In this document: positions 40,960-64,000 of the stretch, piece by piece | Layout: each line of letters starts with the position of its first letter | Position numbering within the stretch: the first letter of the stretch is position 1 | From: Schmidtea polychroa | Taxonomy: Eukaryota | Reading direction: 5' to 3' | Assembly: GCA_044892525.1 (NCBI GenBank) | Contig: CM097885.1 | Coordinates: forward strand, 54,932,001-54,996,000 | Length of the DNA: 64,000 bases | Translations under genes and position numbers: made by a program | Notes under the pieces: generated by a model | Databases searched by the model: none | Told to the model about the DNA's origin: nothing | What the model saw: only the letters and a program-made list of their open reading frames with translations

Positions 40960-41241
40960 ATCAACATAGGCAGGCAGCCGCAATAGATTAAATTAATAAA
41001 TAATTATTCTTGATTTCGCTGGGTTGGGCCCCACAGCACAGCTGTAGCCGCTACACCGTAGTTACGTCACTGATATTAGTTAACTTGAAATTAGAATTTA
41101 ATGAACTCATACTCAAATTACCATATTATTTTATCAGCACTTTTACTGTACCAATTGCGTGCTACTCTCAAGGTCATAATTTTTAGTTATAAATAAATTT
41201 GAAAACTCAATTTATTCATTTTCATATTAAATAATAACTTC

Positions 41242-44200: not shown

Positions 44201-47200
44201 TGTTTATACCTCTTTGAAGTATTTAGTTTTAAACTTATATAAAACTGTGATAAATACGCGTGATGGTTTTTTAAATGTTACAATAAGGTTGGAACATTGC
44301 ATTATTGTAATTATAATTTCGTATAGTTAAATAAATTGTTTTTTCAATATTTCTCATAATAATTCTAGCTCAATTAATCACTTTGAATACATAAACAGAA
44401 ATTCTATTGAAAGAAAATGAAAGATGATAAGGGGGGGGGGGGCTTCTATTATATCATTAGGAGAATTGAATATATTCTCGGAATCCAAAAACCTCTGCCG
44501 ATTGAATTATTATTTTATTTTATTGTTTCTGTGCTGATCCTACTTTTATTGCTATGTTATAATATAAGTAGAAATTTTAAAATTTATAATTTAAAAATTT
44601 AATAAAATTTATTTTAGTATTATCATTTTTTTACAACTTTTACAAATCATTCATTATGCTGTTAAATTCTAACTTCGATATTTCAATGATGACACAAATT
44701 TCGATTCAAGATAGAAAACCAATACAATATTTACCTTCAAAAAGAATTTTCCTTTATTTTTTACATTTCTAAATTTTGATTAATTTTGCAAATAATAAAT
44801 AATAATAATAAATAATATAGCTATATAGGTGACATTATTAAAACAAAAACTAATCATATTTCGGCATTCATTTTTAATACATTACTATAATTTATATATA
44901 ATGTTAATTCAAATTAAAAATTCAGTTAATTGAATTGTTCTAGGCTGAATTATATGCTGGCACATTTGAAGAATTTTTTGCCATTGCTTGGGAAAATCGA
45001 AATTTATTGCCAGTAGTGGATAATGAAGTTGGTGACACTTGGATTCAAGGAACAGCTTCAGATCCCAAAAAGTTTGCTCGATTTCGAGCAATGCAAAGAG
45101 AATTTGAATATTATTATCAAATGGGTATAATATTCGATTTTNNNNNNNNNNNNNNNNNNNNNNNNNNNNNNNNNNNNNNNNNNNNNNNNNNNNNNNNNNN
45201 NNNNNNNNNNNNNNNNNNNNNNNNNNNNNNNNNNNNNNNNNNNNNNNNNNNNNNNNNNNNNNNNNNNNNNNNTATATATTTATAATTTTGAAATTTTTAA
45301 TTAAAGGCATTTAATAATATTTTTGAAGGAAGTGACATAGTACAAAAATAAATTATATATTATACATATTTTTTAAAAATCTAGCTGTATCTGTTATAAA
45401 ACCTTGACTGGTTGAAAATATTTTAAACTATCTAAATAAAAATTATTTTTAAATAAAATACAAATCAAATACTAATTTATTTCACTGAAATTATAAACAT
45501 CAAGTCTGATTCATTTTTCGAAATTCGAAGTTCTCGTAATGTAATGAAGAATTCCTAATTTAGTGTTCTTCTATAATTAGAGCAATTATTATTTCACCAG
45601 ATCCTTCGATGCACCCTAAAATGTTCCACTGCATATCTACTATGAGAGCCAAATGACCCTTGAGAGTAGCATGGCGCATTTCTTAGGGATTATCATTTTA
45701 TCATTATCAATATCCGTCAGGTTTAAGATTTTTAAATAAACAGTAACATCAATTTGTTACACTCACTAATGTTGTATAGAAAGGAATGTGTCATATATAA
45801 ATATATACATATGTAGAGCATAGTCGAGTGTCCTTTAAAACAACTGTAGCAGGGTGGCTGGGGTGAATGTCTGTTGAGTGAGTATGAATGAATTGCCTTA
45901 CAATATTTTGTTAATGTTAGTAATCGAACTCTTACTCATTAATGGGAATTTAAATCGATTGTTTATTTAACTGTTTCATGATCGGAATATTGAATAAATC
46001 ATTTATTAATAGCACACGCTCCACTATGGGAACCAAGTCTTATCAAATTCTGGTACGAACTCCTTGCGATATGGGCTGCTTTACGAGCACGCCGTCGGTC
46101 TCACTCCCGTTTTTCTGGTTTGCCATGCTTAATTCATTTTCTGATGATATTTTGTGGAAATCTTTTCCATTTCCACTCCTACTTTTCTTTTCTCTCTATT
46201 ATTTCAAATTTTTTTATTTCTGTTATGTGGATATGTTATGTTTCAGTTTGTTTCGTGTAATACTTCTTGCTTTTGTTTTATTTTACTTTACGTTTGTGCT
46301 TATCATTTTGGTGTTATGTGAATTCTTTTTAATTGTGTTTAATAGATGTTTTGACGTGCTTTGAGTTTGACCTCACCTAATGTTGTGCCTCCATGCTATT
46401 TTCTGACGAATTTCTGTCACGTTATATCTAAATGACCTTAAATAAGTTATTGCCTAACAGATAGACAGAATAAACATTAAATAACTTCCCATTAAAACCG
46501 GAGGTTAATATATTCATTAAATTTATTTTCTATAGGTTTTTCAAAATAACCAGTCGTCAAACAAAGCGTGGTAACATAAAAATATCTATCTATCTATCTG
46601 TTTGGGTTATTGGTTTGGTGGTAATATCTAAAAGTCACTAATCAAATCTCTGACTCCAAAGTGGGTTTTATCTGATCCACAAAATAACAATTCTCAGACA
46701 AGAGAAACCTTTACTGATTACCACAATGGATTACACGAATCAAATCTATACTCAAATAGGTAATTACACAGAGCTTATCGGGAAGCTACGCGAAGAATAG
46801 ATCTACTCGTATAATTCCCAATTACTGAACAACCACTACCCGCTAATCTGACTCAATAGTCTGGTAAATTAAATTGAATTCCCTTTGCTATGACTTAAAT
46901 TTATTCAGTATATTATAAACCTTTTTTTTGCACTCAATTTTAGTACACCGTTTAGTTCCAATATTTTCAATTGACATTGTATTTATTATAAAACTTGACT
47001 ATGAATCAGTAGAGATATCGATGTTTTTTTGATATTCACGAATTCATAGTCAAGTTTTTTAATAAGTACTATATATATGTGTGTATATATCATCTTTTTT
47101 AGTAGTTGAATTTACTTAAATAATTTGGTTATTGATATGATTCGGAAGGAATTGTAAAATTTACCATTATTTGTATGTCCCTACATACCATTTAATCCTC

Positions 47201-50200
47201 GTGATAAATAATTTGGTGATCACTTAATTACTTAATAAAATTTTATATATTAAGATATTTAACAGTTATTGCATTCATTTTCATCACATTTATAAACTTT
47301 GGCTTTCATATGATTCGAAATTTTAATGCATTGAAACGTGTACCGACAGTAATGTTGTACATTTTATATTTATATTAGTAAATAATTAAAGTAATACTAA
47401 ATGTTTAAATAAATTAATTATTAGTAAATATTTATAGTAATTTTTTTGATGAAAGTTTTACTTTTCTACAAGAATTTCTATCGTGATTGAGTTAAATAAA
47501 ATGAATAAATTATTTTAATAAAAACCAAATATACTTTGTATTCGAGGATTGGGCTAGAAATTCAACCATAATCATCTTAGATTTATAAGATTTTATAAAT
47601 AATTTTAAATATATTATATTACTTTGTTTGTATGTACTTATTTATTAAATAAAAATTGATTATTATTGTGAGATAAATCTAAAATTATATTTATCGCTTA
47701 TTTAAATTGGTATAATATATTTATTATATTATCATATTATATTATATTTATTACATTATTATATTATATATTATATAGTATTTGTATGATTGTAGTATAG
47801 CAACATCACTCAGAATATGAAAATGCATTATTAGATTTTTCAAGGTTTATTTGAAATTTTAATTATATAATATATTGTGAAAATCGTGCGGTTAATTTGA
47901 AAAAAAAATAATATTGAATAATCTTAATAATAAGTATTTTATTATTATTGTTACTATTATTATTATCAAATGATGATTTCTTGGTAGCAGCATTTATTAT
48001 TTAAAACAATAAAATGATAATTTAAGCCTTTTGCTGCAAATAATGTATTTAATGAAAAAATTTTCGACTATAAGATAGTCCTTGTCAATCTATCTTATAG
48101 TCGAAAATTTTTCATTAAATACATTATTTGCAGCAAAATGCTTAAATTATCATTTTATTGTTTTATTATTATTATTATTATTATAAATTAGGTAAACCTA
48201 TTACTTCAAATGTTGTTGATGCATCGAGGTTTATGGTAAAACCTGCCGAACATACTTACGGATTAGATAGTTGTGGAGACACCATTAACTGGCGTAATGA
48301 TCAATTCGAAAATATTAGACAGCGTAAAAATGAAAATATAATATATAAATATATAATTATTGGATTGCCCATTCAGAACCGGGAGTACTCAATTCAGAAT
48401 TGTCATGGGTTGAGCAACGTCAATATCAACAATTGGCTTTAGATATTTTAGGTCCCACCCATCCATTAACAATATCTATTTTAAAAGCTTTTAAAAAGTT
48501 AGAAGATTTTGATGGCATCAAATATCGTAAGTTCGGATCTACATAAATCTCCTCAATATAATTATATCTGTTTGTTTTTTTTTCATGACCTCATTGACAT
48601 TTTATAACTATTTTATAGCAGATTTTAGGTTACGTGAATATATTCAGGATTGAGTAAATGACATCATTTAAACAATTTATATCAATTTACATATGCAATA
48701 ATATAACCATGTGACATACTAAAAACATTCTTATTGCAATAGTACTGTTATAATTTATTAATTATCTAATATTTTGCTTATTCAAGTGAGATAACATTCT
48801 CATATCAAGATATTGAATAGTAAGTTAAAGAATCATAATCCTTAAAAGGTTTTATCCTCTTCACCACTGATTGATCATTACTATTTTCAAATTTGTTAAT
48901 CTTTATTTCAAACAATAGATAAATGCTTTTATTTTTATTTTAAAACTTTGCTGCCAAATTATTGATATTCCATATTTATTGTCATTGTCAAAAATTATAT
49001 TTTATTGTCTGTTTTACAATAAAGTTTATTTGTTTCAACATAATTTATTTCAAGTCACACAAGTTTTTGGCAATATTCGAGATTTGCATTAGTTGTAAAT
49101 AAAATAAATGAAATGTTTAAAGAAAACAGATCAAAATTTAACAAAAAATTAATGGATATTTCTATGTGACCCGTTCCGACGCTTTGACCGCTGCAAAACA
49201 ATTTGTTTATTAACTGTACGAAAGGATGATAAATAGATATTATACAATTAATTAAAATATCCTATTGTATAATAATATTGCAAAATCGTAGTTTCAAGAT
49301 CAGAGGTTATTTATGATGTTTGATGGTTGTTTTTGAATGTTGGTATTTATATGTGGTTGCAGGATTTCTATATCAATAATTAATAAACAAACTTTTAATA
49401 GTTTTCTATATTTATTCCCGCGTTATTGATTGTCTATGAGTTTTATTTAGAAAACTTTTATGTTGTAAATTTATTAGTGTAAAAATTTTTTTTTAAATTG
49501 TTCTTTAGAAGGAGATGGACATTCAGCTCGAAACTCAATTCATTCAAGTAATATTTTGTTGTTTTTATAAATCAAACATCGTCAACTTTCAGATTTTCTG
49601 TATTTCAAATTCTATATTAATTGAAACTTAGTGAAACACAAATTTAGATTAAATTTATTTATTCGCATATTGAATTTTCCGGTTGATTTGTTTACTTTTA
49701 TGTACATTTAGCATTATTTCAACATCTGTTAATTAAGAATATCTTTCGCTTTTCTTGTTTTTACTAGCTTCACATTGTCATTCTTACTCCTATTGTGAGT
49801 AATGTTATTTGAATTACATTATTTTTCTTCGACCACCGCCTATTTTCCTGATTTTTCTCCTGTAGCAGTGTAATGATTTCACTTTAGGTAATATTTTCCT
49901 AATATGATAAAATTTAAATGATAAATTCATCATGATTGATAATAAAGTAAATAATGGAATAGCGTAAAATGACTGAATACAGTTCGAAATGGAAAATATT
50001 CAATTTTTTTCTACTAATTAATTAATTAAATCTAACTTCAAGGTTTCAAACATCAAATGAACACTTACTCTTTCAATTGTACAAACAAGACGCATTTGAT
50101 TACGGTTGAATTTAAAGACGGAGCTATAACAAGTTTAGAAATGGTAAGTTTATCAAAATTGCAAATAACTAATTTCGAAAAGTTTATTTCAGTAATAAAT

Positions 50201-53200
50201 AAATTTTCATATTAAATAATTTAATATTCATAAAGCTTTATCATTAGGAAATTATGTTTTTGACAAACTGAAATATTATGTGATCTAAAGGCTTGCTTAG
50301 ATCATTAAAAATGTTTACATTTTAGTAANNNNNNNNNNNNNNNNNNNNNNNNNNNNNNNNNNNNNNNNNNNNNNNNNNNNNNNNNNNNNNNNNNNNNNNN
50401 NNNNNNNNNNNNNNNNNNNNNNNNNNNNNNNNNNNNNNNNNNNNNNNNNNNNNNNNNNNNNNNNNNNNNNNNNNNNNNNNNNNNNNNNNNNNNNNNNNNN
50501 NNNNNNNNNNNNNNNNNCTAAGAATTGTATTAATCGCAACTAAATAAATTTAATAATATTCAAACAAATTAACAACTAATAATCGTAATCAAACTGTGTC
50601 AAAAAGATATTTGGATAAAATTTTGAAAAACATTTTTTTAATCATATAAAACTTATTTTAATTTTTAAAATGTTCAAAAATTGTTAAAAAACCATTCTCA
50701 TACAAAAGATCTTTTTCAAAAATTAATATAAAAAATAAATACAAATTTAAAAATTCAAAATTGTTTTTATAGAAAAATTTATTACAAGCAACATCATCCC
50801 AAATATTAAATATACAAGTTAAATTATTTATTAATTGAATATTAATTATATGATTTAAAGATCTAAATAACAACGCTTCGCACGTTACTCTTCCCAGTAA
50901 TTACTCAAACTCATCTACAATATCTTAAAAACAGCAAAACTTATTTTTTTACTGGTACACTTCCTAAAATGATTACTAATGTGAGTGAATCCATTCCGTC
51001 GGAATTGCTCAACTCATCTCTGCATTCGAGTTCTTATACCGATTTTTATGAACTTTATAAAGTCGGATAGTTGACTTATAATAAGAAAATCTGAAATGGA
51101 TTAATAGAAATCTAACATTAGAAACAGAAAATCAAGTGACGAAATTATAAATGTATATAATATGCGAGAATTGACAAATATCGCTTTTCTTGTATTTTCT
51201 TAGTTAAAATTTACAATTTTTATTTGAGGTTATCATTTAAGAAGTTTTAAAATTCTATCATGTATGTATTGCCTTGATAAAGGCTCTGCCGAAATATCGT
51301 GTGATTTATTTATTAAAGTTTTGAGATTTTTCAGTCAATTATGTTAATTTTTAATAATCTACGAGACTTTTATTGTATTCATTTCAATTTAATTTTTTCC
51401 AGGATAATATTAAAATAACTCCTGAAAATCCTCTTGGAAAATTAATCTATAACACCTACAACGAATCTGATACAGATTTTTTCCTTAAATATTATAAAAC
51501 ATATTGGAATACCGGTTATGGAAAAACGAATTCAACAGATAATGCGCACCCAGAAAGTAAAGAATGGAAAATCGTAATGAAGAGTATTTATCGACAAAGT
51601 GATAGCTCATGCAGCTTTTTGTGCATACTCGAACCTGAAGATTCGAGAGCGACGACATATTATGGTTTTCCTGATTCAGTTTTGGTTTTATGGGATATTA
51701 ATATTTCAAGTAGGAATTAACACTTATTATATATGTATATCCATATACTTTCTCAAATAGCCAATGAGATTTCTACAGAGGTATTTTGGGATAATAAACC
51801 CCCAACTCGGCTTATGGAGGCTATTTCATTTAAATTTCAACCGGGAATCATTGGTGATCAATTTCAATGGTATTTGAGTAAAATGGGAGAACCGATATCT
51901 CCTTATTCTGTTCTCAAAAATGGTAGTCAATGGCAGCATAGTATGTAATATATTGCACAGTATTTATATAGTTGTTTCGGTGTATAGAATGTTATTAATT
52001 TAATTAAATTTGTGGAAATCTATTGTCACGTGAAATGAAAAGTAAAAATTTAAGTGAGGGCAGAAAAATAAAATATAAATGAACTGGGCAGGCAAATCAT
52101 TATTAATGCCGTGCACTTCTGCATAATTAATTTGCAGCAAAACAGATAGTACGAGACCGTATTATAGAACTCCTACTAATCAAGGTAAACGTTTTCTCAG
52201 CTCATGAATTCTGCAGAATGAGTTTCAATAATATATTTTCTGAACTACGCCGAGCAGTCTTACCTCTTTTACCATAAAATCTAAAGAATATTCAAAAATC
52301 TTTATATTAAATAAAATAAAAAATAAATCATTTAATTACTTAGATATTAACATTAAAAATTAGCGTAATATTAAAATTAACACAATGCGCAATCGACAGG
52401 ATTTCATTTAATGTCCGATTAGCCGATTAGTCCGATTGCGATTTGGTATATATATATATATATATTTCTCGAAAAATGTTGTTGATACACATTGCATGTT
52501 TTGACACATAAAATAAAATATTTACAATACAATACTCAAATTTTAATATTGAATATTGACCATATACTAAAAGTATTAAATTTTTATTCAACTGTCACTT
52601 TGACAGCAAATGGGTTTGTGTTTTTCATGGATTCGGCGTAATACTTATTTTTATATTAATATAATGAAATAAATACAATGTTGGGGTTTGTACAAAAACT
52701 AAAAAATTTATATATAAAAAGAAGGCATAATAAATATTATAAAAATCAATAAAAGTGCAAAATTAATTATAAATAAATGTCAAAAATTAATATTGAACGG
52801 GAGTATCGAGTATGGTTGAACGCCAAATTGATTGAATACTTTAGAAATTATAATGAAAATTTAATAAGGTGTTCTCAGGGAAAGTTACTGCGAAAAAAAC
52901 AAATTAATTAATCTGTACTGGAAGGCCCGAGCTAGTGGGAAGCACGAACCTATAGGAAACCGGAGCGCTGAAGGAAACCTGGTTCGCATTGAGACCCGAT
53001 TGATCAGAGAAGAGAGGGAATATTTCTCGCGCCAATTAAAATAATTTGGAAACCCTCAAATGTTTTTCTAGGATTCCCGGGAAATAATTAATTGCAATTT
53101 TGGAGATAATTGCCCCTCTGAGAAACAGTATAAAAAGACAGCTTAGAAAAAGACAAGCAGCCATTTGGTCGAAGAATAAAAAGAGAAGCTCAGAGAATCT

Positions 53201-54030
53201 GTCGATCAGTGATCAAAAAAAGAAATCTAGTAATTCGAAAAACGTTTAATCCTCGTACGAGAAAAGGTGATTGGCCCTTGGGCTATCTACCTTATCGATT
53301 GATAATTATATTTAGTGAAAGATGCAAACATAGTAACAAATTGTAATTTGTTTGAAATTGAATAAAGTTATTCTATGTTGAGTTTCGACTTATTTTTTTG
53401 AATAAGAACACGAGGGGTCAGAGAAAGAACCGACTTCAAAAATAAAACCCAATAACAATAAGTTAATTATAAATTTTTCATTCAAATTTGTATTTGTCTT
53501 TCTGTTTATAAAGATATTCTATTTATTTATTATTTTTTAACCCCTAACTAAAAGAAATAATAATTGAATGATAAATAATTAAATAAGCATTATTCTTAAA
53601 TTCTGAATATAAATCTAACGAAAGGTAAAATGCTCGGATTTATTTTACTTCCGTCTTTTATGACAGCTTACGAGGCTAGTCTTACTAATAACTATCGGTT
53701 TATCTTTTAGATGTGGATGATTCTGGTGTGTTCATCTCTTCAGCCCCAGATGCTACACCAATATTTCGAGTAATTCCATGGGATACTGGAATTACATGTC
53801 CGATAACTAAAAGTTATGGACCAACTGTTTGGCCAGCTCCACTTTTTCCAATCACGAGCAATTTAACTGGAGTTGCGTTTAATTTTTATAACAATGTCTG
53901 GAATACCAATTATATATACTGGTACCCATTTAGGGGAGCAGGCACCGAAACGGACAATCGATTTAAAGCACGTTTTACAACTCATGTGAATTTGGTGACT
54001 AAGAAAGTGGACGATACTCTTCGATATTAA
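41242..54030 (+). CDS. Secreted GH38-N-like / DUF5054-type glycoside hydrolase. Exons 41242-41307, 41354-41444, 41498-41715, 42795-42996, 43047-43220, 43313-43500, 44944-45124, 48192-48323, 48377-48526, (49509-49547 optional), 50043-50143, 51403-51709, 51761-51940, 53711-54030
   Basis: All joins are GT-AG and in frame (2310 or 2349 nt). Signal-peptide-like MIIVNSFFILVVFYFSLIGLSE. Motifs FMNHLDVGY (GH38-like metal motif), TTHPWL, RDVPG, WGYP, FRNDNTGPP, EVGDTWIQG..SDP.K, KPAEHTYG, SWVEQR, KPPTRLMEA and NNVWNTNY..WY recall the DUF5054 family. Confidence 0.85.
42644..42766 (+). repeat. About 123-bp sequence just upstream of the exon-4 acceptor; inverted copy at 47968-48090
   Basis: Manual alignment to the reverse complement of 47968-48090 gives about 8 differences. 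Confidence 0.85.
43727..44292 (+). repeat. Two diverged copies of an about 170-bp sequence (about 43727-43900 and 44120-44292) in intron 6
   Basis: Both read GATTAGAGGGGAGTGA...TATATGATTGTTATCT...TGATGGTTT...AATAAGGTTGGA with many substitutions. Confidence 0.75.
48002..48165. repeat. Long hairpin (about 77-bp arms, 11-nt loop) ending 26 nt before the exon-8 acceptor
   Basis: Arms 48002-48078 and 48090-48165 are reverse complements with 1 mismatch and 1 indel. Confidence 0.92.
52679..53454 (+). mobile_element. Solo LTR (776 bp) in the last intron of the hydrolase gene; copies at 58935-59710 (inverted) and 60471-60979 (partial)
   Basis: Starts TGTTGGGG and ends CCCAATA (CA mutated to TA), with TSD ACAA on both sides. 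Shares blocks with the 31144-32010 LTR (CCCGAGCTA, TATAAAA, TTGGTCGAAGAA, AAGAACAC..GGGTCAGA, ACCGACTT). Confidence 0.8.
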
Positions 54031-56157
54031 ATTTACTTCTGGAACTTGTGATGAATTATTTTTTGTTATTCATGACTTTTATAAATCTTTTTATTGTGAA
54101 CTCTAATTATTAAAAAACTACTTAAAAACTACTTTAAAAACAGATTTTTTTGTGCAGTTTACTTTTTCAATAAAATATTGTTTAATTGCCAATTTTAAAG
54201 TAAGACAGCCGAATTAGTAAAATAGATTTTATCATTGAGGTAAAGATATACAAGTCAAAGGTAAATCTTAGTTTGGATAATAATTAGGATAGCAAGGTTA
54301 CAACTATTTCAACTTTCGATAATATCAATTTTTTTTATTAATTAATTTATTAATTTAGTGATTCACAGTCAAAAAATATTTAATAAATACAATGTCAATT
54401 GAACAGAAATCAGAGGTGAAAATTGAAAAAAGTTCTTATAACATTAATTATAGATCAAAATATTGATCATTAGTGTAAAAAATAAAAATAAAAATAAAAA
54501 AAATTGAAGGTTAATTTTGAAAAGGATGAAAATTTTTATTTGTATTATTCGTAGGATCGAATTTTAATAATTTTAATAAATTTATTATATGCTTAATTTT
54601 TTTTATATAAAATTCAAACTTCCAAAATTATTTTTTTAAATATAAATGTTTCCATCTTTAAAAAGATAAACTAAATAATAAAAGTATATAATATTGTTTA
54701 AAATTGTGTTAGACATTCTTTTATTGGCGCCTTTAGTTTAAACTTTTGAGTGTTTTGGATTTCTGAACTGTGACAATGCATAATAAAGTTGTTCATTATA
54801 AAAAAACATGAACGTTTAAATGTACACAAACAAAATTAAATGTTTAACTTTAAGACTGGGTAATGGTCATGAATATGCTGTAAATTCTCAATTGATAGAT
54901 AACATTGTAGTGCCTCTGACTTCCACATTAATTAAAATATCAACCAAATAATTAAACTTAAAATATATTATTAAATTAATTAAATTAAAATTATTATTTT
55001 GATATTCTTTTCTTTCAAAAAACCATATAAAAACAATTCATGCAGCATTCAACATCTCAAACGTTAATTCTTATCAAAATCAATAAAAAAAATATCCCAA
55101 ACATTCGAAAAGCTGAAACTTTTGTTTTTCTAGCCGTGTTCTCTCTGTTGATGAGCTTGATCATCATCACTTATTCAGCCTAAGAAATTTTTCTTAGAAT
55201 ACTAATTAGCGATTCTAGCGATTCTTATGATAAAGTTCGTTACGTGAGCCGTGATTAATCATTAAGACTTATTTTCAATTAATAATGGGAGTTATAAATT
55301 GAAAATTGGTCATGTATTGAATAGTTAATGGGGAAAAACTTCATTATACTTATTTTGTGGGAAATGCATTAAAAGTACAAAATGTTCAATAGTAAAGTAA
55401 AACAAATGTGATTCATAGTGTCAAAGCTTTGGAAATGAGACCAAAATTTGCTCAGATTTTGTCAGAAATTCAATATATTTTAATATCGTCAAATATATAT
55501 TTTACTATGTGTAAACTTATAACATTATAGTATGTATCCTGTTGGGAGGCCAGGAGCTTATTGTTAGTTGAAGGAAATTTGTTAAATAATTATATTTTAT
55601 ATTGTGTATATGAAAATGTAAAACAGAAAGAGTCAACCTAACCTATTTTTGAGAAGCATTTGCAATATTAGAAGCTTCGTAGTTGATAAATATTTTTTAT
55701 AATTTTTTTTCATAAAATATTTTACTGGTGAAAATTGATCCAAAACTCCGCACCAAAATAAGAGAAGCATTAGAAGATTTTCCAAAAACATTTCTATAAT
55801 TAAAATTTATTTCCAGTTTTGTTGTTGGTATATAAATTGGTGCAAAAATAACATTGAACGTACAAAGAATTTTAGACAGGGCAATTAAGTGTCAAAAATT
55901 TTTTAAATTAAATATATTTTAATTAGAAAATTTGAAAAAATATTGAAAAATCTAAAAATTAATTTTTCTCGAGAGCAAAACTATGAGCAATTAGCCAATT
56001 ACATGATAAATAAGTATAATATCCCTAGGCGACTTTTTACTACATTTACAAGGACGACATTTATCATATCATTTGGGTAGACACAATTTCGGAGCATGAC
56101 AGGGATTTTGCTATTTTGCTACATTAATATAATTAAATCTAATCATGGTTTATTTAA

Positions 56158-56378
56158 CCCTCTAACGCTCACAAGAAAACTACACGTAAAAATTTCTTAA
56201 TCGTTATTTATTATGACGTATTGGGTAAATTAGAACATTTATAACAAAAATTATGGAGAATTTTTTCATAGACTACTAGTGCCATCTATTGTTGAGATGG
56301 GCCACTACTTTCAGGATAAAAACATGAAACCACGCATTTAACAAGTGTACCGATGTGAGTACAGTGGGAGGTAATGGG
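56158..56378. mobile_element. Possible piggyBac-type MITE (copy at 63683-63903)
   Basis: TTAA-CCC ... GGG-TTAA, but the TIR similarity beyond the terminal CCC is weak. Confidence 0.4.
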
Positions 56379-57771
56379 TTAAATTGATTCCGGATTTCAT
56401 ATTAGTAAACTCTTAGTTTATATTACATATGCTATTAATCGTCGTTATGTTGGTAATCTTACTTTGAAATGTAAAAAGGAAGAAATGGCGATGCTAGATA
56501 AAGAATTCCCTGAACCTGCAGGTGATGCTGTCAATGTCAATCATGGTGTATCTAACTGAGTCCAGATTTAATAGTGAGTAATGTGAGAAATTTTCTGAAT
56601 TGAAATTGTAATTTTTAAAAAATTTTTCCCAAGTTGTAATTTTGATCCATTTTTATCAAAAGATTAGACAGCTAGCTATGATGAATGGAGATATAGTATC
56701 AATTACCCATTAGATTATGGTTTGAAAGTGATGGCAACCAGAGGATGGTGCCAGCTTAATCGGGTCGTGGAGCAATTATTCTACGGAGATTGATTCACCA
56801 AATTAATCGTATTGCCGGTATTTTTTATTTAAAAACTTTTTAAGTGTTTGTTCTTTAAATTTTTTTGCAATTTTTAAGAGTTATTTAAAGCTATTTCTTT
56901 AATCAATTTAATCAACTATATATCTGGTTATGTTAATCGAATATGGTTAACTCATGCGGTAAGGGGTTGTTCTTATTTTCGTATTTATTGATTAAAGTAA
57001 GCACTCGAATTAGCAAGGAAGATTTTTTCGTGTTCATTGTTTTTTATCTTTTTGATTTTTTAGTAGGGACGACCTGGATTTAGGTAGTTTTAATCTCTCC
57101 CTTTTAAACTTCTAATTTTTGCTAGCATATTTATAGGAATAAATGTTTATTCTATTCTTTTGAGGGTCGGCTTGATTTGATTCATTTATAGGAATTAGCC
57201 CTCTGGTACCAGACGCAATGATCGATCACATTCGTCATTTTAATTAATGTTAAATCTACTTCAATCTTCATTGTATGCTGTGAGGATTTTACGTCTAAAT
57301 GTTTAAATACTCGTTTTTCGACCTCCAGTGGCGTGCGAGTATGCGTATTTTTGACAATAAAATTGATTTACATTATCGAAGAAGCTGAGATGTAAAATAA
57401 ATTTTAAAATATTTATTGGTGGTTTGATTTGATATTTAATAGAATATAAAATTAATATAATTATCTATTAATTTTTTCCAAATTTCCATCACCAAGCAGA
57501 ACGTAACAGGGTCACCGATAAAATTTGTATTATGACTGCTAAGTCAATTGTATGTCAAATTGTATGATTTGATGTATATGTATATATTACTAAGTAAAAC
57601 CTCAAATAAATCTTCCTAGAAGAATTATTTGTTTTTTTGAAAAAAATCTAAGTTGGGAATTATGTAGGTTTTCCAAAAAATATTTATTGGCGGTTTGGTT
57701 TGACATTTAATAGAATATAAAATTCATATAATTATCTATTAATTTCTTTCCAAATTTGTATTTCCAGATGG

Positions 57772-60470
57772 GGAATTTTGAATTTTATATAAAAAAAATT
57801 AAGCATATAATAATTTTATTAAAATTATTAAAATTCGATCCTACGAATAATACAAATAAAAATTTTCATCCTTTTCAAAATTAACCTTCAATTTTTTTTA
57901 TTTTTATTTTTTACACTAATGATCAATATTTTGATCTATAATTAATGTTATAAGAACTTTTTTCAATTTTCACCTCTGATTTCTGTTCAATTGACATTGC
58001 ATTTATTAAATATTTTTTGACTGTGAATCACTAAATTAATAAATTAATTAATAAAAAAAATTGATATTATCGAAAGTTGAAATAGTTGTAACCTTGCCAT
58101 CCTAATTATTATCCAAACTAAGATTTACCTTTGACTTGTATATCTTTACCTCAATGATAAAATCTATTTTACTAATTCGGCTGTCTTACTTTAAAATTGG
58201 CAATTAAACAATATTTTATTGAAAAAGTAAACTGCACAAAAAAATCTGTTTTTAAAGTAGTTTTTAAGTAGTTTTTTAATAATTAGAGTTCACAATAAAA
58301 AGATTTATAAAAGTCATGAATAACAAAAAATAATTCATCACAAGTTCCAGAAGTAAATTTAATATCGAAGAATATCGTCCACTTTCTTGGTCACCAAATT
58401 CACATGAGTTGTAAAACGTGCTTTAAATCGATTGTCCGTTTCGGTGCCTGCTCCCCTAAATGGGTACCAGTATATATAATTGGTATTCCAGACATTGTTA
58501 TAAAAATGAAACGCAACTCCAGTTAAATTGCTCGTGATTGGAAAAAGTGGAGCTGGCCAAACAGTTGGTCCATAACTTTTAGTTATCGGACATGTAATTC
58601 CAGTATCCCATGGAATTACTCGAAATATCGGTGTAGCATCTGGGGCTGAAGAGATGAACACACCAGAATCATCCACATCTAAAAGATAAACCGATAGTTA
58701 TTAGTAAGACTAGCCTCGTAAGCTGTCATAAAAGACGGAAGTAAAATAAATCCGAGCATTTTACCTTTCGTTAGATTTATATTCAGAATTTAAGAATAAT
58801 GCTTATTTAATTATTTATCATTCAATTATTATTTCTTTTAGTTAGGGGTTAAAAAATAATAAATAAATAGAATATCTTTATAAACAGAAAGACAAATACA
58901 AATTTGAATGAAAAATTTATAATTAACTTATTGTTATTGGGTTTTATTTTTGAAGTCGGTTCTTTCTCTGACCCCTCGTGTTCTTATTCAAAAAAATAAG
59001 TCGAAACTCAACATAGAATAACTTTATTCAATTTCAAACAAATTACAATTTGTTACTATGTTTGCATCTTTCACTAAATATAATTATCAATCGATAAGGT
59101 AGATAGCCCAAGGGCCAATCACCTTTTCTCGTACGAGGATTAAACGTTTTTCGAATTACTAGATTTCTTTTTTTGATCACTGATCGACAGATTCTCTGAG
59201 CTTCTCTTTTTATTCTTCGACCAAATGGCTGCTTGTCTTTTTCTAAGCTGTCTTTTTATACTGTTTCTCAGAGGGGCAATTATCTCCAAAATTGCAATTA
59301 ATTATTTCCCGGGAATCCTAGAAAAACATTTGAGGGTTTCCAAATTATTTTAATTGGCGCGAGAAATATTCCCTCTCTTCTCTGATCAATCGGGTCTCAA
59401 TGCGAACCAGGTTTCCTTCAGCGCTCCGGTTTCCTATAGGTTCGTGCTTCCCACTAGCTCGGGCCTTCCAGTACAGATTAATTAATTTGTTTTTTTCGCA
59501 GTAACTTTCTCTGAGAACACCTTATTAAATTTTCATTATAATTTCTAAAGTATTCAATCAATTTGGCGTTCAACCATACTCGATACTCCCGTTCAATATT
59601 AATTTTTGACATTTATTTATAATTAATTTTGCACTTTTATTGATTTTAATAATATTTATTATGCCTTCTTTTTATATATAAATTTTTTAGTTTTTGTACA
59701 AACCCCAACATTGTATTTATTTCATTATATTAATATAAAAATAAGTATTACGCCGAATCCATGAAAAACACAAACCCATTTGCTGTCAAAGTGACAGTTG
59801 AATAAAAATTTAATACTTTTAGTATATGGTCAATATTCAATATTAAAATTTGAGTATTGTATTGTAAATATTTTATTTTATGTGTCAAAACATGCAATGT
59901 GTATCAACAACATTTTTCGAGAAATATATATATATATATATACCAAATCGCAATCGGACTAATCGGCTAATCGGACATTAAATGAAATCCTGTCGATTGC
60001 GCATTGTGTTAATTTTAATATTACGCTAATTTTTAATGTTAATATCTAAGTAATTAAATGATTTATTTTTTATTTTATTTAATATAAAGATTTTTGAATA
60101 TTCTTTAGATTTTATGGTAAAAGAGGTAAGACTGCTCGGCGTAGTTCAGAAAATATATTATTGAAACTCATTCTGCAGAATTCATGAGCTGAGAAAACGT
60201 TTACCTTGATTAGTAGGAGTTCTATAATACGGTCTCGTACTATCTGTTTTGCTGCAAATTAATTATGCAGAAGTGCACGGCATTAATAATGATTTGCCTG
60301 CCCAGTTCATTTATATTTTATTTTTCTGCCCTCACTTAAATTTTTACTTTTCATTTCACGTGACAATAGATTTCCACAAATTTAATTAAATTAATAACAT
60401 TCTATACACCGAAACAACTATATAAATACTGTGCAAAATATTACATACTATGCTGCCATTGACTACCATT
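57772..60470 (-). repeat. Inverted duplicate (about 2.7 kb) of 51919-54623
   Basis: Reverse-complement match with coordinate sum 112389 over most of its length, plus a small indel in an AAAAAT run. Includes the last 22 nt of the penultimate exon, the last intron and the terminal exon. Confidence 0.95.
58359..58678 (-). pseudogene. Inverted orphan copy of the hydrolase terminal exon
   Basis: Same 105-aa text as 53713-54030 except N>H and T>I; two further synonymous changes. Confidence 0.9.
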
Positions 60471-63400
60471 GAACCCATAGGAAACCGGAGCGCTGAAGGA
60501 AACCTGGTTCGCATTGAGACCCGATTGATCAGAGAAGAGAGGGAATATTTCTCGCGCCAATTAAAATAATTTGGAAACCCTCAAATGTTTTTCTAGGATT
60601 CTCGGGAAATAATTAATTGCAATTTTGGAGATAATTGCCCCTCTGAGAAACAGTATAAAAAGACAGCTTAGAAAAAGACAAGCAGCCATTTGGTCGAAGA
60701 ATAAAAAGAGAAGCTCAGAGAATCTGTCGATCAGTGATCAAAAAAAGAAATCTAGTAATTCGAAAAACGTTTAATCCTCGTACGAGAAAAGGTGATTGGC
60801 CCTTGGGCTATCTACCTTATCGATTGATAATTATATTTAGTGAAAGATGCAAACATAGTAACAAATTGTAATTTGTTTGAAATTGAATAAAGTTATTCTA
60901 TGTTGAGTTTCGACTTATTTTTTTGAATAAGAACACGAGGGGTCAGAGAAAGAACCGACTTCAAAAATAAAACCCAATAACAATAAGTTAATTATAAATT
61001 TTTCATTCAAATTTGTATTTGTCTTTCTGTTTATAAAGATATTCTATTTATTTATTATTTTTTAACCCCTAACTAAAAGAAATAATAATTGAATGATAAA
61101 TAATTAAATAAGCATTATTCTTAAATTCTGAATATAAATCTAACGAAAGGTAAAATGCTCGGATTTATTTTACTTCCGTCTTTTATGACAGCTTACGAGG
61201 CTAGTCTTACTAATAACTATCGGTTTATCTTTTAGATGTGGATGATTCTGGTGTGTTCATCTCTTCAGCCCCAGATGCTACACCAATATTTCGAGTAATT
61301 CCATGGGATACTGGAATTACATGTCCGATAACTAAAAGTTATGGACCAACTGTTTGGCCAGCTCCACTTTTTCCAATCACGAGCAATTTAACTGGAGTTG
61401 CGTTTAATTTTTATAACAATGTCTGGAATACCAATTATATATACTGGTACCCATTTAGGGGAGCAGGCACCGAAACGGACAATCGATTTAAAGCACGTTT
61501 TACAACTCATGTGAATTTGGTGACTAAGAAAGTGGACGATACTCTTCGATATTAAATTTACTTCTGGAACTTGTGATGAATTATTTTTTGTTATTCATGA
61601 CTTTTATAAATCTTTTTATTGTGAACTCTAATTATTAAAAAACTACTTAAAAACTACTTTAAAAACAGATTTTTTTGTGCAGTTTACTTTTTCAATAAAA
61701 TATTGTTTAATTGCCAATTTTAAAGTAAGACAGCCGAATTAGTAAAATAGATTTTATCATTGAGGTAAAGATATACAAGTCAAAGGTAAATCTTAGTTTG
61801 GATAATAATTAGGATAGCAAGGTTACAACTATTTCAACTTTCGATAATATCAATTTTTTTTATTAATTAATTTATTAATTTAGTGATTCACAGTCAAAAA
61901 ATATTTAATAAATACAATGTCAATTGAACAGAAATCAGAGGTGAAAATTGAAAAAAGTTCTTATAACATTAATTATAGATCAAAATATTGATCATTAGTG
62001 TAAAAAATAAAAATAAAAATAAAAAAAATTGAAGGTTAATTTTGAAAAGGATGAAAATTTTTATTTGTATTATTCGTAGGATCGAATTTTAATAATTTTA
62101 ATAAATTTATTATATGCTTAATTTTTTTTATATAAAATTCAAACTTCCAAAATTATTTTTTTAAATATAAATGTTTCCATCTTTAAAAAGATAAACTAAA
62201 TAATAAAAGTATATAATATTGTTTAAAATTGTGTTAGACATTCTTTTATTGGCGCCTTTAGTTTAAACTTTTGAGTGTTTTGGATTTCTGAACTGTGACA
62301 ATGCATAATAAAGTTGTTCATTATAAAAAAACATGAACGTTTAAATGTACACAAACAAAATTAAATGTTTAACTTTAAGACTGGGTAATGGTCATGAATA
62401 TGCTGTAAATTCTCAATTGATAGATAACATTGTAGTGCCTCTGACTTCCACATTAATTAAAATATCAACCAAATAATTAAACTTAAAATATATTATTAAA
62501 TTAATTAAATTAAAATTATTATTTTGATATTCTTTTCTTTCAAAAAACCATATAAAAACAATTCATGCAGCATTCAACATCTCAAACGTTAATTCTTATC
62601 AAAATCAATAAAAAAAATATCCCAAACATTCGAAAAGCTGAAACTTTTGTTTTTCTAGCCGTGTTCTCTCTGTTGATGAGCTTGATCATCATCACTTATT
62701 CAGCCTAAGAAATTTTTCTTAGAATACTAATTAGCGATTCTAGCGATTCTTATGATAAAGTTCGTTACGTGAGCCGTGATTAATCATTAAGACTTATTTT
62801 CAATTAATAATGGGAGTTATAAATTGAAAATTGGTCATGTATTGAATAGTTAATGGGGAAAAACTTCATTATACTTATTTTGTGGGAAATGCATTAAAAG
62901 TACAAAATGTTCAATAGTAAAGTAAAACAAATGTGATTCATAGTGTCAAAGCTTTGGAAATGAGACCAAAATTTGCTCAGATTTTGTCAGAAATTCAATA
63001 TATTTTAATATCGTCAAATATATATTTTACTATGTGTAAACTTATAACATTATAGTATGTATCCTGTTGGGAGGCCAGGAGCTTATTGTTAGTTGAAGGA
63101 AATTTGTTAAATAATTATATTTTATATTGTGTATATGAAAATGTAAAACAGAAAGAGTCAACCTAACCTATTTTTGAGAAGCATTTGCAATATTAGAAGC
63201 TTCGTAGTTGATAAATATTTTTTATAATTTTTTTTCATAAAATATTTTACTGGTGAAAATTGATCCAAAACTCCGCACCAAAATAAGAGAAGCATTAGAA
63301 GATTTTCCAAAAACATTTCTATAATTAAAATTTATTTCCAGTTTTGTTGTTGGTATATAAATTGGTGCAAAAATAACATTGAACGTACAAAGAATTTTAG

Positions 63401-64000
63401 ACAGGGCAATTAAGTGTCAAAAATTTTTTAAATTAAATATATTTTAATTAGAAAATTTGAAAAAATATTGAAAAATCTAAAAATTAATTTTTCTCGAGAG
63501 CAAAACTATGAGCAATTAGCCAATTACATGATAAATAAGTATAATATCCCTAGGCGACTTTTTACTACATTTACAAGGACGACATTTATCATATCATTTG
63601 GGTAGACACAATTTCGGAGCATGACAGGGATTTTGCTATTTTGCTACATTAATATAATTAAATCTAATCATGGTTTATTTAACCCTCTAACGCTCACAAG
63701 AAAACTACACGTAAAAATTTCTTAATCGTTATTTATTATGACGTATTGGGTAAATTAGAACATTTATAACAAAAATTATGTAGAATTTTTTCATAGACTA
63801 CTAGTGCCATCTATTGTTGAGATGGGCCACTACTTTCAGGATAAAAACATGAAACCACGCATTTAACAAGTGTACCGATGTGAGTACAGTGGGAGGTAAT
63901 GGGTTAAATTGATTCCGGATTTCATATTAGTAAACTCTTAGTATATATTACATATGCTATTAATCGTCGTTATGTTGGTAATCTTACTTTGAAATGTAAA
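60471..64000 (+). repeat. Direct duplicate of 52946-56475 (runs off the window end)
   Basis: Constant offset 7525; only four substitutions noticed (60476, 60602, 63781, 63943). Confidence 0.95.
61236..61555 (+). pseudogene. Third (direct) copy of the hydrolase terminal exon with an intact splice acceptor
   Basis: Translation identical to 53711-54030; preceded by the same TTATCTTTTAG acceptor. Confidence 0.85.

What the first reader, a model, noticed from the sequence alone, without database searches (positions are those of the whole stretch)
51919..64000. DUP-TRP/INV-DUP-shaped rearrangement triplicating the hydrolase's last exon
Seen: let X=51919-52945, Y=52946-54623 and Z=54624-57771. The window then reads X Y Z, inverted (Y X), then Y Z onward. 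X is doubled, Y (with the terminal exon) is tripled with the middle copy inverted, and Z is doubled. At junction 60470/60471 the inverted strand would continue CCATT-TTTGA-GAAC but reads CCATT-GAAC, so GAAC is a possible microhomology with a 5-bp loss, and there is a substitution 5 bp later. Junction 57771/57772 sits just after an about 80-bp diverged direct repeat (about 57407 and 57677). Established: this architecture is the signature of two replication template switches (FoSTeS/MMBIR), known from human CNV disorders and yeast inverted triplications.
Basis: partly seen in the sequence, partly recalled or inferred. Interest (0 to 1): 0.7.

Follow-up and report, generated by a model that had tools for sequence, protein, structure and literature searches.

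The report
Duplication inside convergent gene-pair palindrome
Two tail-to-tail copies of a gene in a flatworm-like genome form a large mirror-image repeat, and 7.5 kb at its centre has been copied once more. Cut off by the window's end, this looks like a human-disease-type 'inverted triplication'. It appears real but leaves both genes whole, so it is a clean example of a known kind of rearrangement.

Summary
The described layout is exactly there: 52946-56475 = 60471-64000 (99.9%) and 51919-54623 = reverse complement of 57772-60470 (99.4%). But the window cuts the structure.

With 40 kb more of the same chromosome it reads W X Y Z Y'X' Y Z Y'X'W'. Two complete convergent DUF5054-family genes form an older inverted duplication, 94-96% identical at the outside and 98.6-99.3% over the inner 6.5 kb. 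A 7,525-bp unit [Y Z Y'X'] at its centre is present twice. Genome-wide, Y (last exon) is x4, X x3 and Z x2.

Only 60470/60471 is a new junction, and it is blunt. 57771/57772 is the old inner edge of the palindrome and occurs twice.

Short-read contigs of four runs from two studies all end exactly at 60470, and a contig spans 57771/57772. The genome's statistics fit a published HiFi assembly. I rate the structure real at about 0.9.

The middle inverted copy is chimeric, gene-B type next to Z and gene-A type further on. This fits an inverted-repeat-mediated DUP-TRP/INV-DUP event (about 0.45), or a plain tandem duplication followed by arm-to-arm conversion (about 0.38).

Both genes stay intact. 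This is a known kind of rearrangement, of modest interest. The scan noted other palindromes in this genome, but not this one.

The parts
42741..54030 (+). Gene A, DUF5054-family. Exon ORFs lie at 42741-43007, 43031-43243, 45007-45141, 48158-48442, 51373-~51711, ~51769-51940 and 53711-54030 (last exon).
   Evidence: ORFs. Pfam DUF5054 matches on two exon ORFs, both below Pfam's curated cut-off of 37.6 bits (E 6.5e-6 at 26.7 bits; 0.0035 at 17.8 bits). tblastn finds a full second copy and a third paralog. Splice sites were read.
48146..51918 (+). W1: outer part of the highly similar inner arm (gene A exons 4-6). Its mirror W' lies beyond the window at G000:C1:54999998-55003547.
   Evidence: 48146-50188 is 98.6% and 50518-51918 about 99.6% identical to the inverted copy. 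The N run 50329-50517 was left untouched.
51919..52945 (+). X1: last 22 bp of exon 6, the donor GTATGT at 51941, and the 5' part of intron 6.
52946..54623 (+). Y1: rest of intron 6 (its first ~510 bp lie within a dispersed repeat that starts upstream in X), acceptor, last exon 53711-54030, stop, AATAAA 138 nt after the stop, and 3' flank up to the arm's inner edge.
54624..57771 (+). Z1: the 3,148-bp spacer of the palindrome. It holds a ~345-bp dispersed repeat at about 54906-55251 and the 81-bp direct repeat near its end.
   Evidence: There are only two full copies of Z in the genome, both here. Z1 and Z2 differ at 5 sites.
57772..59443 (-). Y2': inverted orphan copy of Y with last-exon copy 58359-58678. 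It is chimeric: gene-B type at 54000, 54291, the 6-bp deletion, 54581 and 54619 (Y1 numbering), and gene-A type from 53509 onward.
   Evidence: Four-way site patterns. Its three private exon changes are derived relative to paralog C, and two change an amino acid.
59444..60470 (-). X2': inverted orphan copy of X, gene-A type at all 8 arm-diagnostic sites.
60470..60471 (.). The only novel junction. Exon 6 (inverted) is joined bluntly to intron 6 (direct).
   Evidence: Junction letters. The junction 32-mer is unique in the genome. The preceding 30-mer occurs exactly 3 times. Contigs of four runs end exactly at 60470.
60471..62148 (+). Y3: direct orphan copy of Y with last-exon copy 61236-61555. 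It differs from Y1 at 2 sites.
62149..64000 (+). Z2, first 1,852 bp. Z2 runs on to 65296 in window numbering. Then follow Y4' X4' W' and the rest of gene B on the minus strand, up to about 82296.

Best explanation
SHOWN. The locus is an older inverted (tail-to-tail) duplication of a whole DUF5054-family gene. Gene A is on + at 42741-54030. Gene B is on - at about 82296-65886 in window numbering, beyond the window. The inner 6.5 kb of the two genes are kept nearly identical and are separated by a 3.1-kb spacer Z. Inside this palindrome a 7,525-bp unit [Y Z Y'X'] is present twice, with one new, blunt junction at 60470/60471. That junction joins exon 6 in inverted orientation to intron 6 in direct orientation. 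Both genes remain whole. The extra DNA puts two orphan copies of the last exon (with acceptor, stop and poly(A) signal), one on each strand, between the genes' 3' ends.

INFERRED, and slightly favoured. The extra unit arose in one replication-repair event of the inverted-repeat-mediated DUP-TRP/INV-DUP type. A strand being copied through Z into gene B's arm re-invaded gene A's arm by homology in the opposite orientation. It copied Y' and X' from arm A, which made a chimeric arm and no visible junction. It then let go inside exon 6 and resumed, without homology, 1,027 bp away at 52946 in the forward direction, copying Y and Z a second time before running on into gene B.
For: Structure: searches give W X Y Z Y'X' Y Z Y'X'W', with unit 52946-60470 = 60471-67997 at 99.64%. 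Searches show two complete convergent genes, 93.9-95.7% identical in their outer parts and 98.6-99.3% in the inner 6.5 kb.

Reality:
- The 30-mer before the junction occurs only 3 times in the genome, and the junction 32-mer occurs once.
- In all four runs laid (two studies) a contig ends exactly at 60470. That needs a fork in the read graph at that base.
- An X4 contig of 1,451 nt spans Z|Y'.
Reads of that length would span the 4.4 kb between Z1 and Z2.

Mechanism:
- At 17 sites that tell arm A from arm B, the middle copy reads A at the 10 sites from 52344 to 53509, then B B A A B B B up to Z1. A runs test gives p=0.017, and the chance of the first ten all being A is p=0.003.
- The polarity, B-type next to Z1 and A-type toward the blunt junction, is what the model predicts.
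- The duplicated Z is exactly the interval between the inverted arms, as in the model (PMC11293582).
- Blunt second junctions occur in the human series.
- The two units differ 7/4826 in Y Z but 19/2700 in Y'X' (Fisher p=1.3e-4). A plain tandem duplication alone does not predict this.
- Three of 14 unit-private variants lie within 150 bp of the junction (p=0.02). This fits error-prone repair synthesis.
Against: - Formally the product equals a simple tandem duplication with one junction. Nothing in the sequence requires two switches.
- The arms clearly exchange sequence: identity rises toward the centre. The study-P1 runs differ from the assembly by 1-2.8% in non-coding parts here, yet show the same contig end at 60470. 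That suggests an old, shared junction and concerted evolution, in which case the chimeric pattern could be later conversion and all the 'ages' are unreliable.
- Two sites (54426, 54449) break the single-switch pattern.
- No contig bridging 60470/60471 was among the pieces listed.
- Contig depths fit the X3:Y4:Z2 copy numbers only in run X4.
- No single long molecule was seen by me.
Confidence: 0.45

Rival explanations
1. A plain tandem duplication. One non-homologous join (an end-joining between sister chromatids, or a single backward template switch of 7.5 kb) duplicated [Y Z Y'X'] across the centre of the existing palindrome. Arm-to-arm gene conversion later overwrote at least 1.2 kb of the middle inverted copy with gene-A type sequence.
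For: - There are two head-to-tail units of 7,525 bp at 99.64%.
- There is only one novel junction in the genome, and it is blunt, as end-joining gives.
- Conversion between arms is evident from the identity gradient, 94-96% outside and 98.6-99.3% inside.
- The likely sharing of the junction by runs that are 1-2.8% diverged elsewhere in the locus implies ongoing homogenisation.
- Tandem duplication is the commonest kind of duplication (general knowledge).
Against: - It needs two events where one suffices.
- Unit divergence is uneven (p=1.3e-4). Without conversion, copy 4 would carry 12 private changes against about 2 expected (p=1e-6).
- The gene-A-type part of the middle copy differs from X1Y1 by 5 sites in about 2 kb. 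That is no less than the 7/4826 between Y1Z1 and Y3Z2, so the supposed conversion is not visibly younger than the duplication.
Confidence: 0.38
2. An assembly artefact. The extra 7.5-kb unit does not exist in the animal and was produced by the assembler from two haplotypes or from chimeric reads.
For: - The repeats are 99.4-99.9% identical, and the animal may be heterozygous.
- Contig depths in runs X6, X1 and X2 do not fit X3:Y4:Z2 well.
- The copy-2 private allele at 60437 is not seen in any run's contigs.
Against: - The junction is non-homologous, and overlap-based assemblers do not create such joins.
- Missing-adapter fold-back reads would give X'|X, not X'|Y.
- Contigs of four short-read runs from two studies end exactly at 60470, although the preceding 30-mer has only these three genomic places. 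So the reads themselves fork there.
- No N and no contig break lies in the region.
- No alternative haplotig of Z exists.
- HiFi reads of 14-22 kb exceed the unit length.
Confidence: 0.1
3. ODIRA-type origin. An inverted triplication with palindromic junctions formed at a replication fork, and one long palindromic junction (Y'X'|XY) was later trimmed by an asymmetric deletion of X, leaving Y'X'|Y.
For: Brewer et al. 2024 (PMC10766186) propose exactly this route for human DUP-TRP/INV-DUP shapes. The Y2' X2' Y3 stretch is an inverted repeat of Y with X as an asymmetric 1-kb centre.
Against: No short inverted repeat or microhomology is present at 51919 / 52946. The route needs an extra deletion whose ends happen to give a blunt join. 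The Z|Y' side is an old boundary, not a fresh fold-back.
Confidence: 0.05

Closest known systems
Inverted-repeat-mediated DUP-TRP/INV-DUP rearrangements of human genomic-disorder loci (MECP2, PLP1; Grochowski et al. 2024 PMC11293582; Beck et al. 2015 PMC4352052)
   Same: - A pre-existing pair of inverted repeats.
- The middle copy is inverted.
- A chimeric repeat stands where junction 1 would be.
- The duplicated distal segment is exactly the interval between the repeats.
- The second junction is non-homologous; blunt ones are on record in the human series.
   Different: - The second switch falls inside the repeat arm itself. Relative to the ancestral palindrome, copy numbers therefore go 2->3 (X), 2->4 (Y) and 1->2 (Z), and the product is indistinguishable from a tandem duplication.
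- The scale is 7.5 kb rather than tens to hundreds of kb.
- It sits in an assembled invertebrate genome, probably shared between samples, not as a de novo pathogenic allele.
- A single-event origin is not shown.
Simple tandem duplication with an end-joined junction
   Same: Two head-to-tail units of one contiguous ancestral segment, and one novel blunt junction.
   Different: Divergence between the units is uneven, and the inverted part of unit 1 carries the other arm's variants.
ODIRA inverted triplications of yeast (Brewer et al. 2015 PMC4689423; 2024 PMC10766186)
   Same: Direct-inverted-direct order of copies, and a replication-fork origin is proposed.
   Different: No short inverted repeats at the junction, the junctions are not fold-backs, and no origin of replication is known here.
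Gene-bearing palindromes kept alike by arm-to-arm gene conversion (e.g. human sex-chromosome palindromes; from general knowledge, not tested against a paper here)
   Same: Long inverted arms carrying paralogous genes around a short unique spacer, with identity much higher in the inner arms than in the older flanks.
   Different: The arms here are short (6.5 kb of high identity within about 12-17 kb of gene), and an extra duplicated unit sits at the centre.

Membership tests
DUP-TRP/INV-DUP (inverted-repeat-mediated) | Copy-number pattern duplication - triplication - duplication, with the middle copy of the triplicated segment inverted | tested here: met
   Counted on arm A, X is 1->2, Y is 1->3 (middle copy inverted) and Z is 1->2. 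Counting gene B's arm too gives X3, Y4, Z2.
DUP-TRP/INV-DUP (inverted-repeat-mediated) | A pre-existing pair of inverted repeats flanks the distal duplication, and that duplication equals the interval between them | tested here: met
   The arms 48146-54623 and rc(65297-71547) predate the event, since they belong to full convergent genes that are 94-96% identical further out. Z (3,148 bp) is exactly the spacer.
DUP-TRP/INV-DUP (inverted-repeat-mediated) | Junction 1 is a recombinant (chimeric) repeat | tested here: inconclusive
   Y2'X2' is gene-B type next to Z1 and gene-A type beyond 53509 (p=0.003-0.017). Later gene conversion would look the same, and two sites break the pattern.
DUP-TRP/INV-DUP (inverted-repeat-mediated) | Junction 2 is non-homologous (microhomology, small insertion or blunt) | tested here: met
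   60470/60471 is blunt with 0 bp shared. The human series includes blunt junctions.
DUP-TRP/INV-DUP (inverted-repeat-mediated) | Both junctions lie in cis on single molecules and arose in one event | not testable with these tools
   Only short Logan contigs could be laid. Long reads and pedigrees are out of reach.
Simple tandem duplication | Two adjacent head-to-tail copies of one contiguous segment with a single novel junction | tested here: met
   52946-60470 = 60471-67997 at 99.64%. The junction 32-mer is unique. The Z|Y' boundary is identical in both units.
Simple tandem duplication | The units are equally diverged along their length, and each part is sister to its counterpart | tested here: not met
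   7/4826 against 19/2700 differences, p=1.3e-4. X2' groups with X1, not X4', at 8 of 8 diagnostic sites. It is met only if later conversion is added.
ODIRA inverted triplication | Both junctions lie at short, closely spaced inverted repeats (fold-back junctions) | tested here: not met
   There is no inverted microhomology between the 51919 and 52946 breakpoints. X'|Y is not a fold-back.
NAHR-mediated duplication | Direct repeats at both ends of the duplicated unit | tested here: not met
   The sequence after unit 2 (W', exon 6) has no similarity to the start of Y. The dispersed repeat at the start of Y spans the breakpoint and has no partner at the other end.
DUF5054 protein family (Pfam PF16477), for the gene concerned | Match to the Pfam model above its curated cut-off | tested here: inconclusive
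   Single exon ORFs match at E 6.5e-6 (26.7 bits) and 0.0035 (17.8 bits), both below the 37.6-bit cut-off because only pieces were scanned. The spliced protein was not scanned, and 'hydrolase' activity was not tested.

The most novel reading that the evidence does not exclude
The arrangement may work as a hairpin-RNA locus. Each convergent gene now has, about 3.7 kb past its own last exon, an inverted copy of that exon and its flanks: Y1 with Y2', and Y4' with Y3. Read-through transcripts would fold into a ~1.7-kb double-stranded stem. That could feed small-RNA silencing of the three DUF5054 paralogs, and selection for it could explain why the copies are kept so alike and why the junction seems shared between diverged samples.
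Probability: 0.05. Interest if true: 0.6.

Novelty: new member of a known kind. Interest (0 to 1): 0.3.

Why it matters
If the one-event reading holds, this is a natural, apparently population-shared example outside humans and yeast of an inverted-repeat-driven inverted triplication, complete with its chimeric arm. It would show that the mechanism known from de novo disease alleles also remodels gene clusters over evolutionary time, in a lineage noted for fast structural change (PMC11410931).

In practice it is also a caution. A window edge turned a 'tandem unit inside a palindrome' into an apparent two-junction rearrangement.

No effect on the coding capacity of either gene is evident.

Tried and rejected
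(1) Breakpoint at a transposon edge. One search showed thousands of 80-84% matches starting at base 1 of Y. Aligning four copies with flanks showed the repeat runs at least 60-100 bp upstream of 52946, so the start at base 1 was an effect of where my query began. Rejected.

(2) GAAC microhomology. It needs an added 5-bp loss. Read directly, the junction has no shared bases. Rejected.

(3) NAHR between direct repeats. There is no similarity between the start of Y and the sequence after unit 2. Rejected.

(4) The 81-bp direct repeat near the end of Z as a cause. It lies in both Z copies, 14 bp inside an old boundary, and no link to the new junction was found.

(5) Copy number from contig depth. 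Run X4 fits X3:Y4:Z2 (X/Z 1.55, Y/Z 2.09), but X6, X1 and X2 do not fit cleanly, and the tool warns against using depth. Not used as support.

(6) A whole-genome search with the Pfam model found nothing exon by exon, and its controls also found nothing. A protein search with exon 5 worked instead and found three paralogs, all in this cluster.

(7) Dead ends on the gene's function:
- The protein-atlas look-up of exon 5 gave no usable hit.
- The PDB sequence search gave only designed repeat proteins, which I take to be spurious.
- Rfam found no RNA family in 48000-64000.

(8) A first try at look-up of sequencing runs failed as busy and was repeated unchanged.

(9) A literature search for inverted triplications in natural fly populations returned nothing relevant.

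N runs were left as they are.
Full report
OBSERVATION.
- 52946-56475 repeats directly at 60471-64000: 3530 nt, 4 mismatches, cut by the window end.
- 51919-54623 repeats inverted at 60470-57772: 2705 nt, 11 mismatches and one 6-bp gap.
- No N run lies in the region.
- The junction letters, the substitution at 60476 and the 81-bp direct repeat near the end of Z are as described.

THE WINDOW CUTS THE STRUCTURE. The window is G000:C1:54932001-54996000. That search also found a fourth copy of Y just beyond the end. I fetched 40 kb more and repeated the self-comparison.

In window numbering the region reads W(48146-51918) X Y Z | Y'X' | Y Z | Y'X'W'(to 71547).
- The direct repeat is a full unit of 7,525 bp: 52946-60470 = 60471-67997, 99.64%.
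- The second inverted copy runs on through X into W: 50518-54623 = rc 65297-69399 at 99.3%, and 48146-50188 = rc 69506-71547 at 98.6%.
- Genome-wide, Y is present four times, X three times and Z twice. There are no other copies of Z and no alternative haplotig.

THE GENES.
- Exon-sized ORFs on the + strand from 42741 to 54030 belong to a DUF5054-family gene. The Pfam matches are on two exon ORFs, both below the curated cut-off because only pieces were scanned.
- tblastn of these exons shows a complete second copy on the minus strand at about 82296-65886, 96-100% identical in protein. A third, older paralog lies further on at about 102271-89970, 48-90% identical across its five matched exons.
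- These three are the only members in the genome.
- DNA identity between genes A and B is 93.9-95.7% in the outer parts (41115-45141). It jumps to 98.6-99.3% from 48146 inward.
- So an old tail-to-tail gene pair has had its inner 6.5 kb homogenised, with Z as the spacer.
- The donor of exon 6 is GTATGT at 51941, and the acceptor of the last exon is at 53710. The phases agree. The two breakpoints of the new junction therefore lie in exon 6, 22 bp before its end, and in intron 6.
- All four copies of the last exon keep the acceptor, open frame, stop and AATAAA. Only the inverted orphan copy has amino-acid changes (N57H, T102I), both derived relative to paralog C.
- Genes A and B are both left intact.

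JUNCTIONS.
- The Z|Y' boundary has the same letters at 57771/57772 and at 65296/65297. It is the inner edge of the older palindrome, not a junction of the recent event.
- The only novel join is 60470/60471...CTACCATT|GAACCC... Neither donor sequence shares bases across it, so it is blunt.
- The dispersed repeat at the start of Y spans the breakpoint rather than ending at it.
- No repeat is shared between the two breakpoints, so homologous unequal exchange is out.

IS IT REAL?
- The 30-mer that precedes the junction occurs in just three places in the genome, X1, X2' and X4'. The junction 32-mer occurs once.
- Only short-read contigs were available. In all four runs laid (X4 and X6 of one study, X1 and X2 of another) a contig ends exactly at 60470. 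In X4 and X6 the listed contig is laid over its whole length.
- In a word graph such an end needs two continuations after that base. Given, these can only be the native one and the junction.
- An X4 contig of 1,451 nt spans Z1|Y2' with 35 nt beyond it, and an X2 contig spans it with 30 nt.
- I did not see a listed contig that bridges 60470/60471. The sequence beyond is a high-copy repeat, and only the longest pieces are shown.
- Contig depths fit X3:Y4:Z2 in X4 but not cleanly in the other runs. I do not count them as support.
- The genome's size, contig number and GC (781.27 Mb, 1012 contigs, about 28%) nearly equal those of the published Schmidtea polychroa assembly (781.29 Mb, 1013 contigs, 28.1%). 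That assembly was made from HiFi reads of DNA sheared to 14-22 kb with hifiasm (PMC11410931).
- Earlier notes of this scan also call the genome Schmidtea-like. The match to that assembly is an inference.
- Reads of that length exceed the unit length, and a non-homologous join is not something an overlap assembler invents.
- I put the structure at about 0.9 real.

HOW IT FORMED. I aligned the four Y and three X copies.

At the 17 sites that distinguish gene A's arm (copy 1) from gene B's arm (copy 4), the middle inverted copy behaves as follows:
- It is A-type at all ten sites from 52344 to 53509.
- It is B-type at 54000 and 54291.
- It is A-type at 54426 and 54449.
- It is B-type at the 6-bp deletion, 54581 and 54619, next to Z1.

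Y3 and Z2 are nearly identical to Y1 and Z1: 7 differences in 4826. The two inverted copies differ at 19 positions in 2700 (p=1.3e-4).

A tandem duplication alone predicts that Y2'X2' is sister to Y4'X4' throughout, which is rejected. Copy 4 would have 12 private changes against about 2 expected (p=1e-6).

Two histories fit.

(a) The inverted-repeat-mediated DUP-TRP/INV-DUP route described for human loci (PMC11293582).
- A homology-driven switch between the inverted arms makes a chimeric repeat and duplicates the interval between them.
- A second, non-homologous switch sets the size of the inverted segment.
- Here that second switch falls inside the arm, so the product looks like a tandem unit.
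- The polarity of the chimera is the one this route predicts: B-type next to Z1, A-type toward the blunt junction.
- The blunt junction and three unit-private variants within 150 bp of it (p=0.02) also fit.
- The A-type part of the middle copy is about as diverged from X1Y1 (5 in about 2 kb) as Y3Z2 is from Y1Z1, as expected if both were copied at the same time.

(b) A plain tandem duplication, then arm-to-arm conversion of at least 1.2 kb.
- This is credible because conversion clearly acts here.
- The runs of study P1 differ from the assembly by 1-2.8% in non-coding parts of the locus, yet show the same contig end at 60470.
- If they carry the junction, the copies evolve in concert, and variant patterns are a poor record of origin.

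I favour (a) slightly, 0.45 against 0.38. An ODIRA-plus-deletion route (PMC10766186) gets 0.05 and an artefact 0.1.

COMPARISON AND VERDICT. The thing works like, and may be, a small evolutionary instance of the inverted-repeat-mediated inverted triplication known from MECP2 and PLP1. Formally it is also a tandem duplication.
- It is not an ODIRA product by the junction test.
- It is not NAHR.
- There is no sign that it changes either gene's product.
- It is a new member of a known kind and of modest interest. Its main value is as a clean natural example, and as a warning about structures cut by a window edge.
- The most novel reading not excluded is that the facing last-exon copies form a hairpin-RNA source. 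I could not test expression.

LIMITS. Only one call each of the run finder and the read layer was allowed, and only contigs were available. The spliced protein could not be submitted by reference, so the family assignment rests on exon pieces.

Noticed in passing
beyond the window: G000:C1:55021970-55034271 (window numbering about 89970-102271), minus strand: A third, older DUF5054-family paralog (five matched exons 48-90% identical in protein to gene A) lies downstream of gene B. The family has only these three members in the genome, all in this cluster.
   Followed up: partly
window 52860-53455 (and the same stretch in the other three Y copies): A dispersed repeat of about 600 bp has thousands of candidate copies at 80-84% identity across all four large chromosomes. 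Its ends look like short terminal inverted repeats (GTGTTC ... GAACAC). It was not classified.
   Followed up: partly
window about 54906-55251 (in Z): A second dispersed repeat of about 345 bp, with at least 40 scored copies at 83-89% identity genome-wide.
   Followed up: no
window 52257-52380; also 7853-7978 and 9268-9393: A 126-bp repeat shared at 88% between intron 6 and two places early in the window, possibly a miniature transposon.
   Followed up: no
window 57487 joined to 61795 on opposite strands (runs X1, X2 only): Contigs of study P1 join Z at 57487 to inverted Y at the position matching 58119. This would be a ~630-bp shorter Z|Y' boundary in one copy or allele. The same runs also hold the reference boundary. 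The shorter side of the joint is only 36 letters, so it may be spurious.
   Followed up: no
window 57403-57719 (runs X4, X6): Contigs replace about 315 bp, covering the first copy of the 81-bp direct repeat, the interval between the copies and about half of the second copy, by 22 other letters. This suggests an allelic or copy-specific variant of the end of Z.
   Followed up: no
window 56500-62400, runs X1 and X2: The two runs of study P1 differ from the assembly by 1-2.8% in non-coding parts of this locus (16 substitutions and 4 gaps in 722 nt of Z) but by 0 in one contig and about 1% in the other over the last exon. This points to a well-diverged lineage or haplotype under the same species label.
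   Followed up: no
window 47964-48165 and 42643-42770: A 164-bp self-complementary element (48002-48165) and a related inverted copy near exon 1 sit exactly where A/B identity jumps from 79% to 98.6%. They may mark the edge of the homogenised tract.
   Followed up: no
beyond the window: window numbering 73231-73431, 75812-76096, 82293-82593: Short-period tandem arrays lie in the introns and 5' end of gene B and have no counterpart in gene A. They are part of why gene B is longer, about 16.4 kb against 11.3 kb.
   Followed up: no
window 39846-40460 (+): A 204-aa ORF just upstream of gene A has no Pfam match. By eye it looks like a transposase-derived fragment.
   Followed up: no
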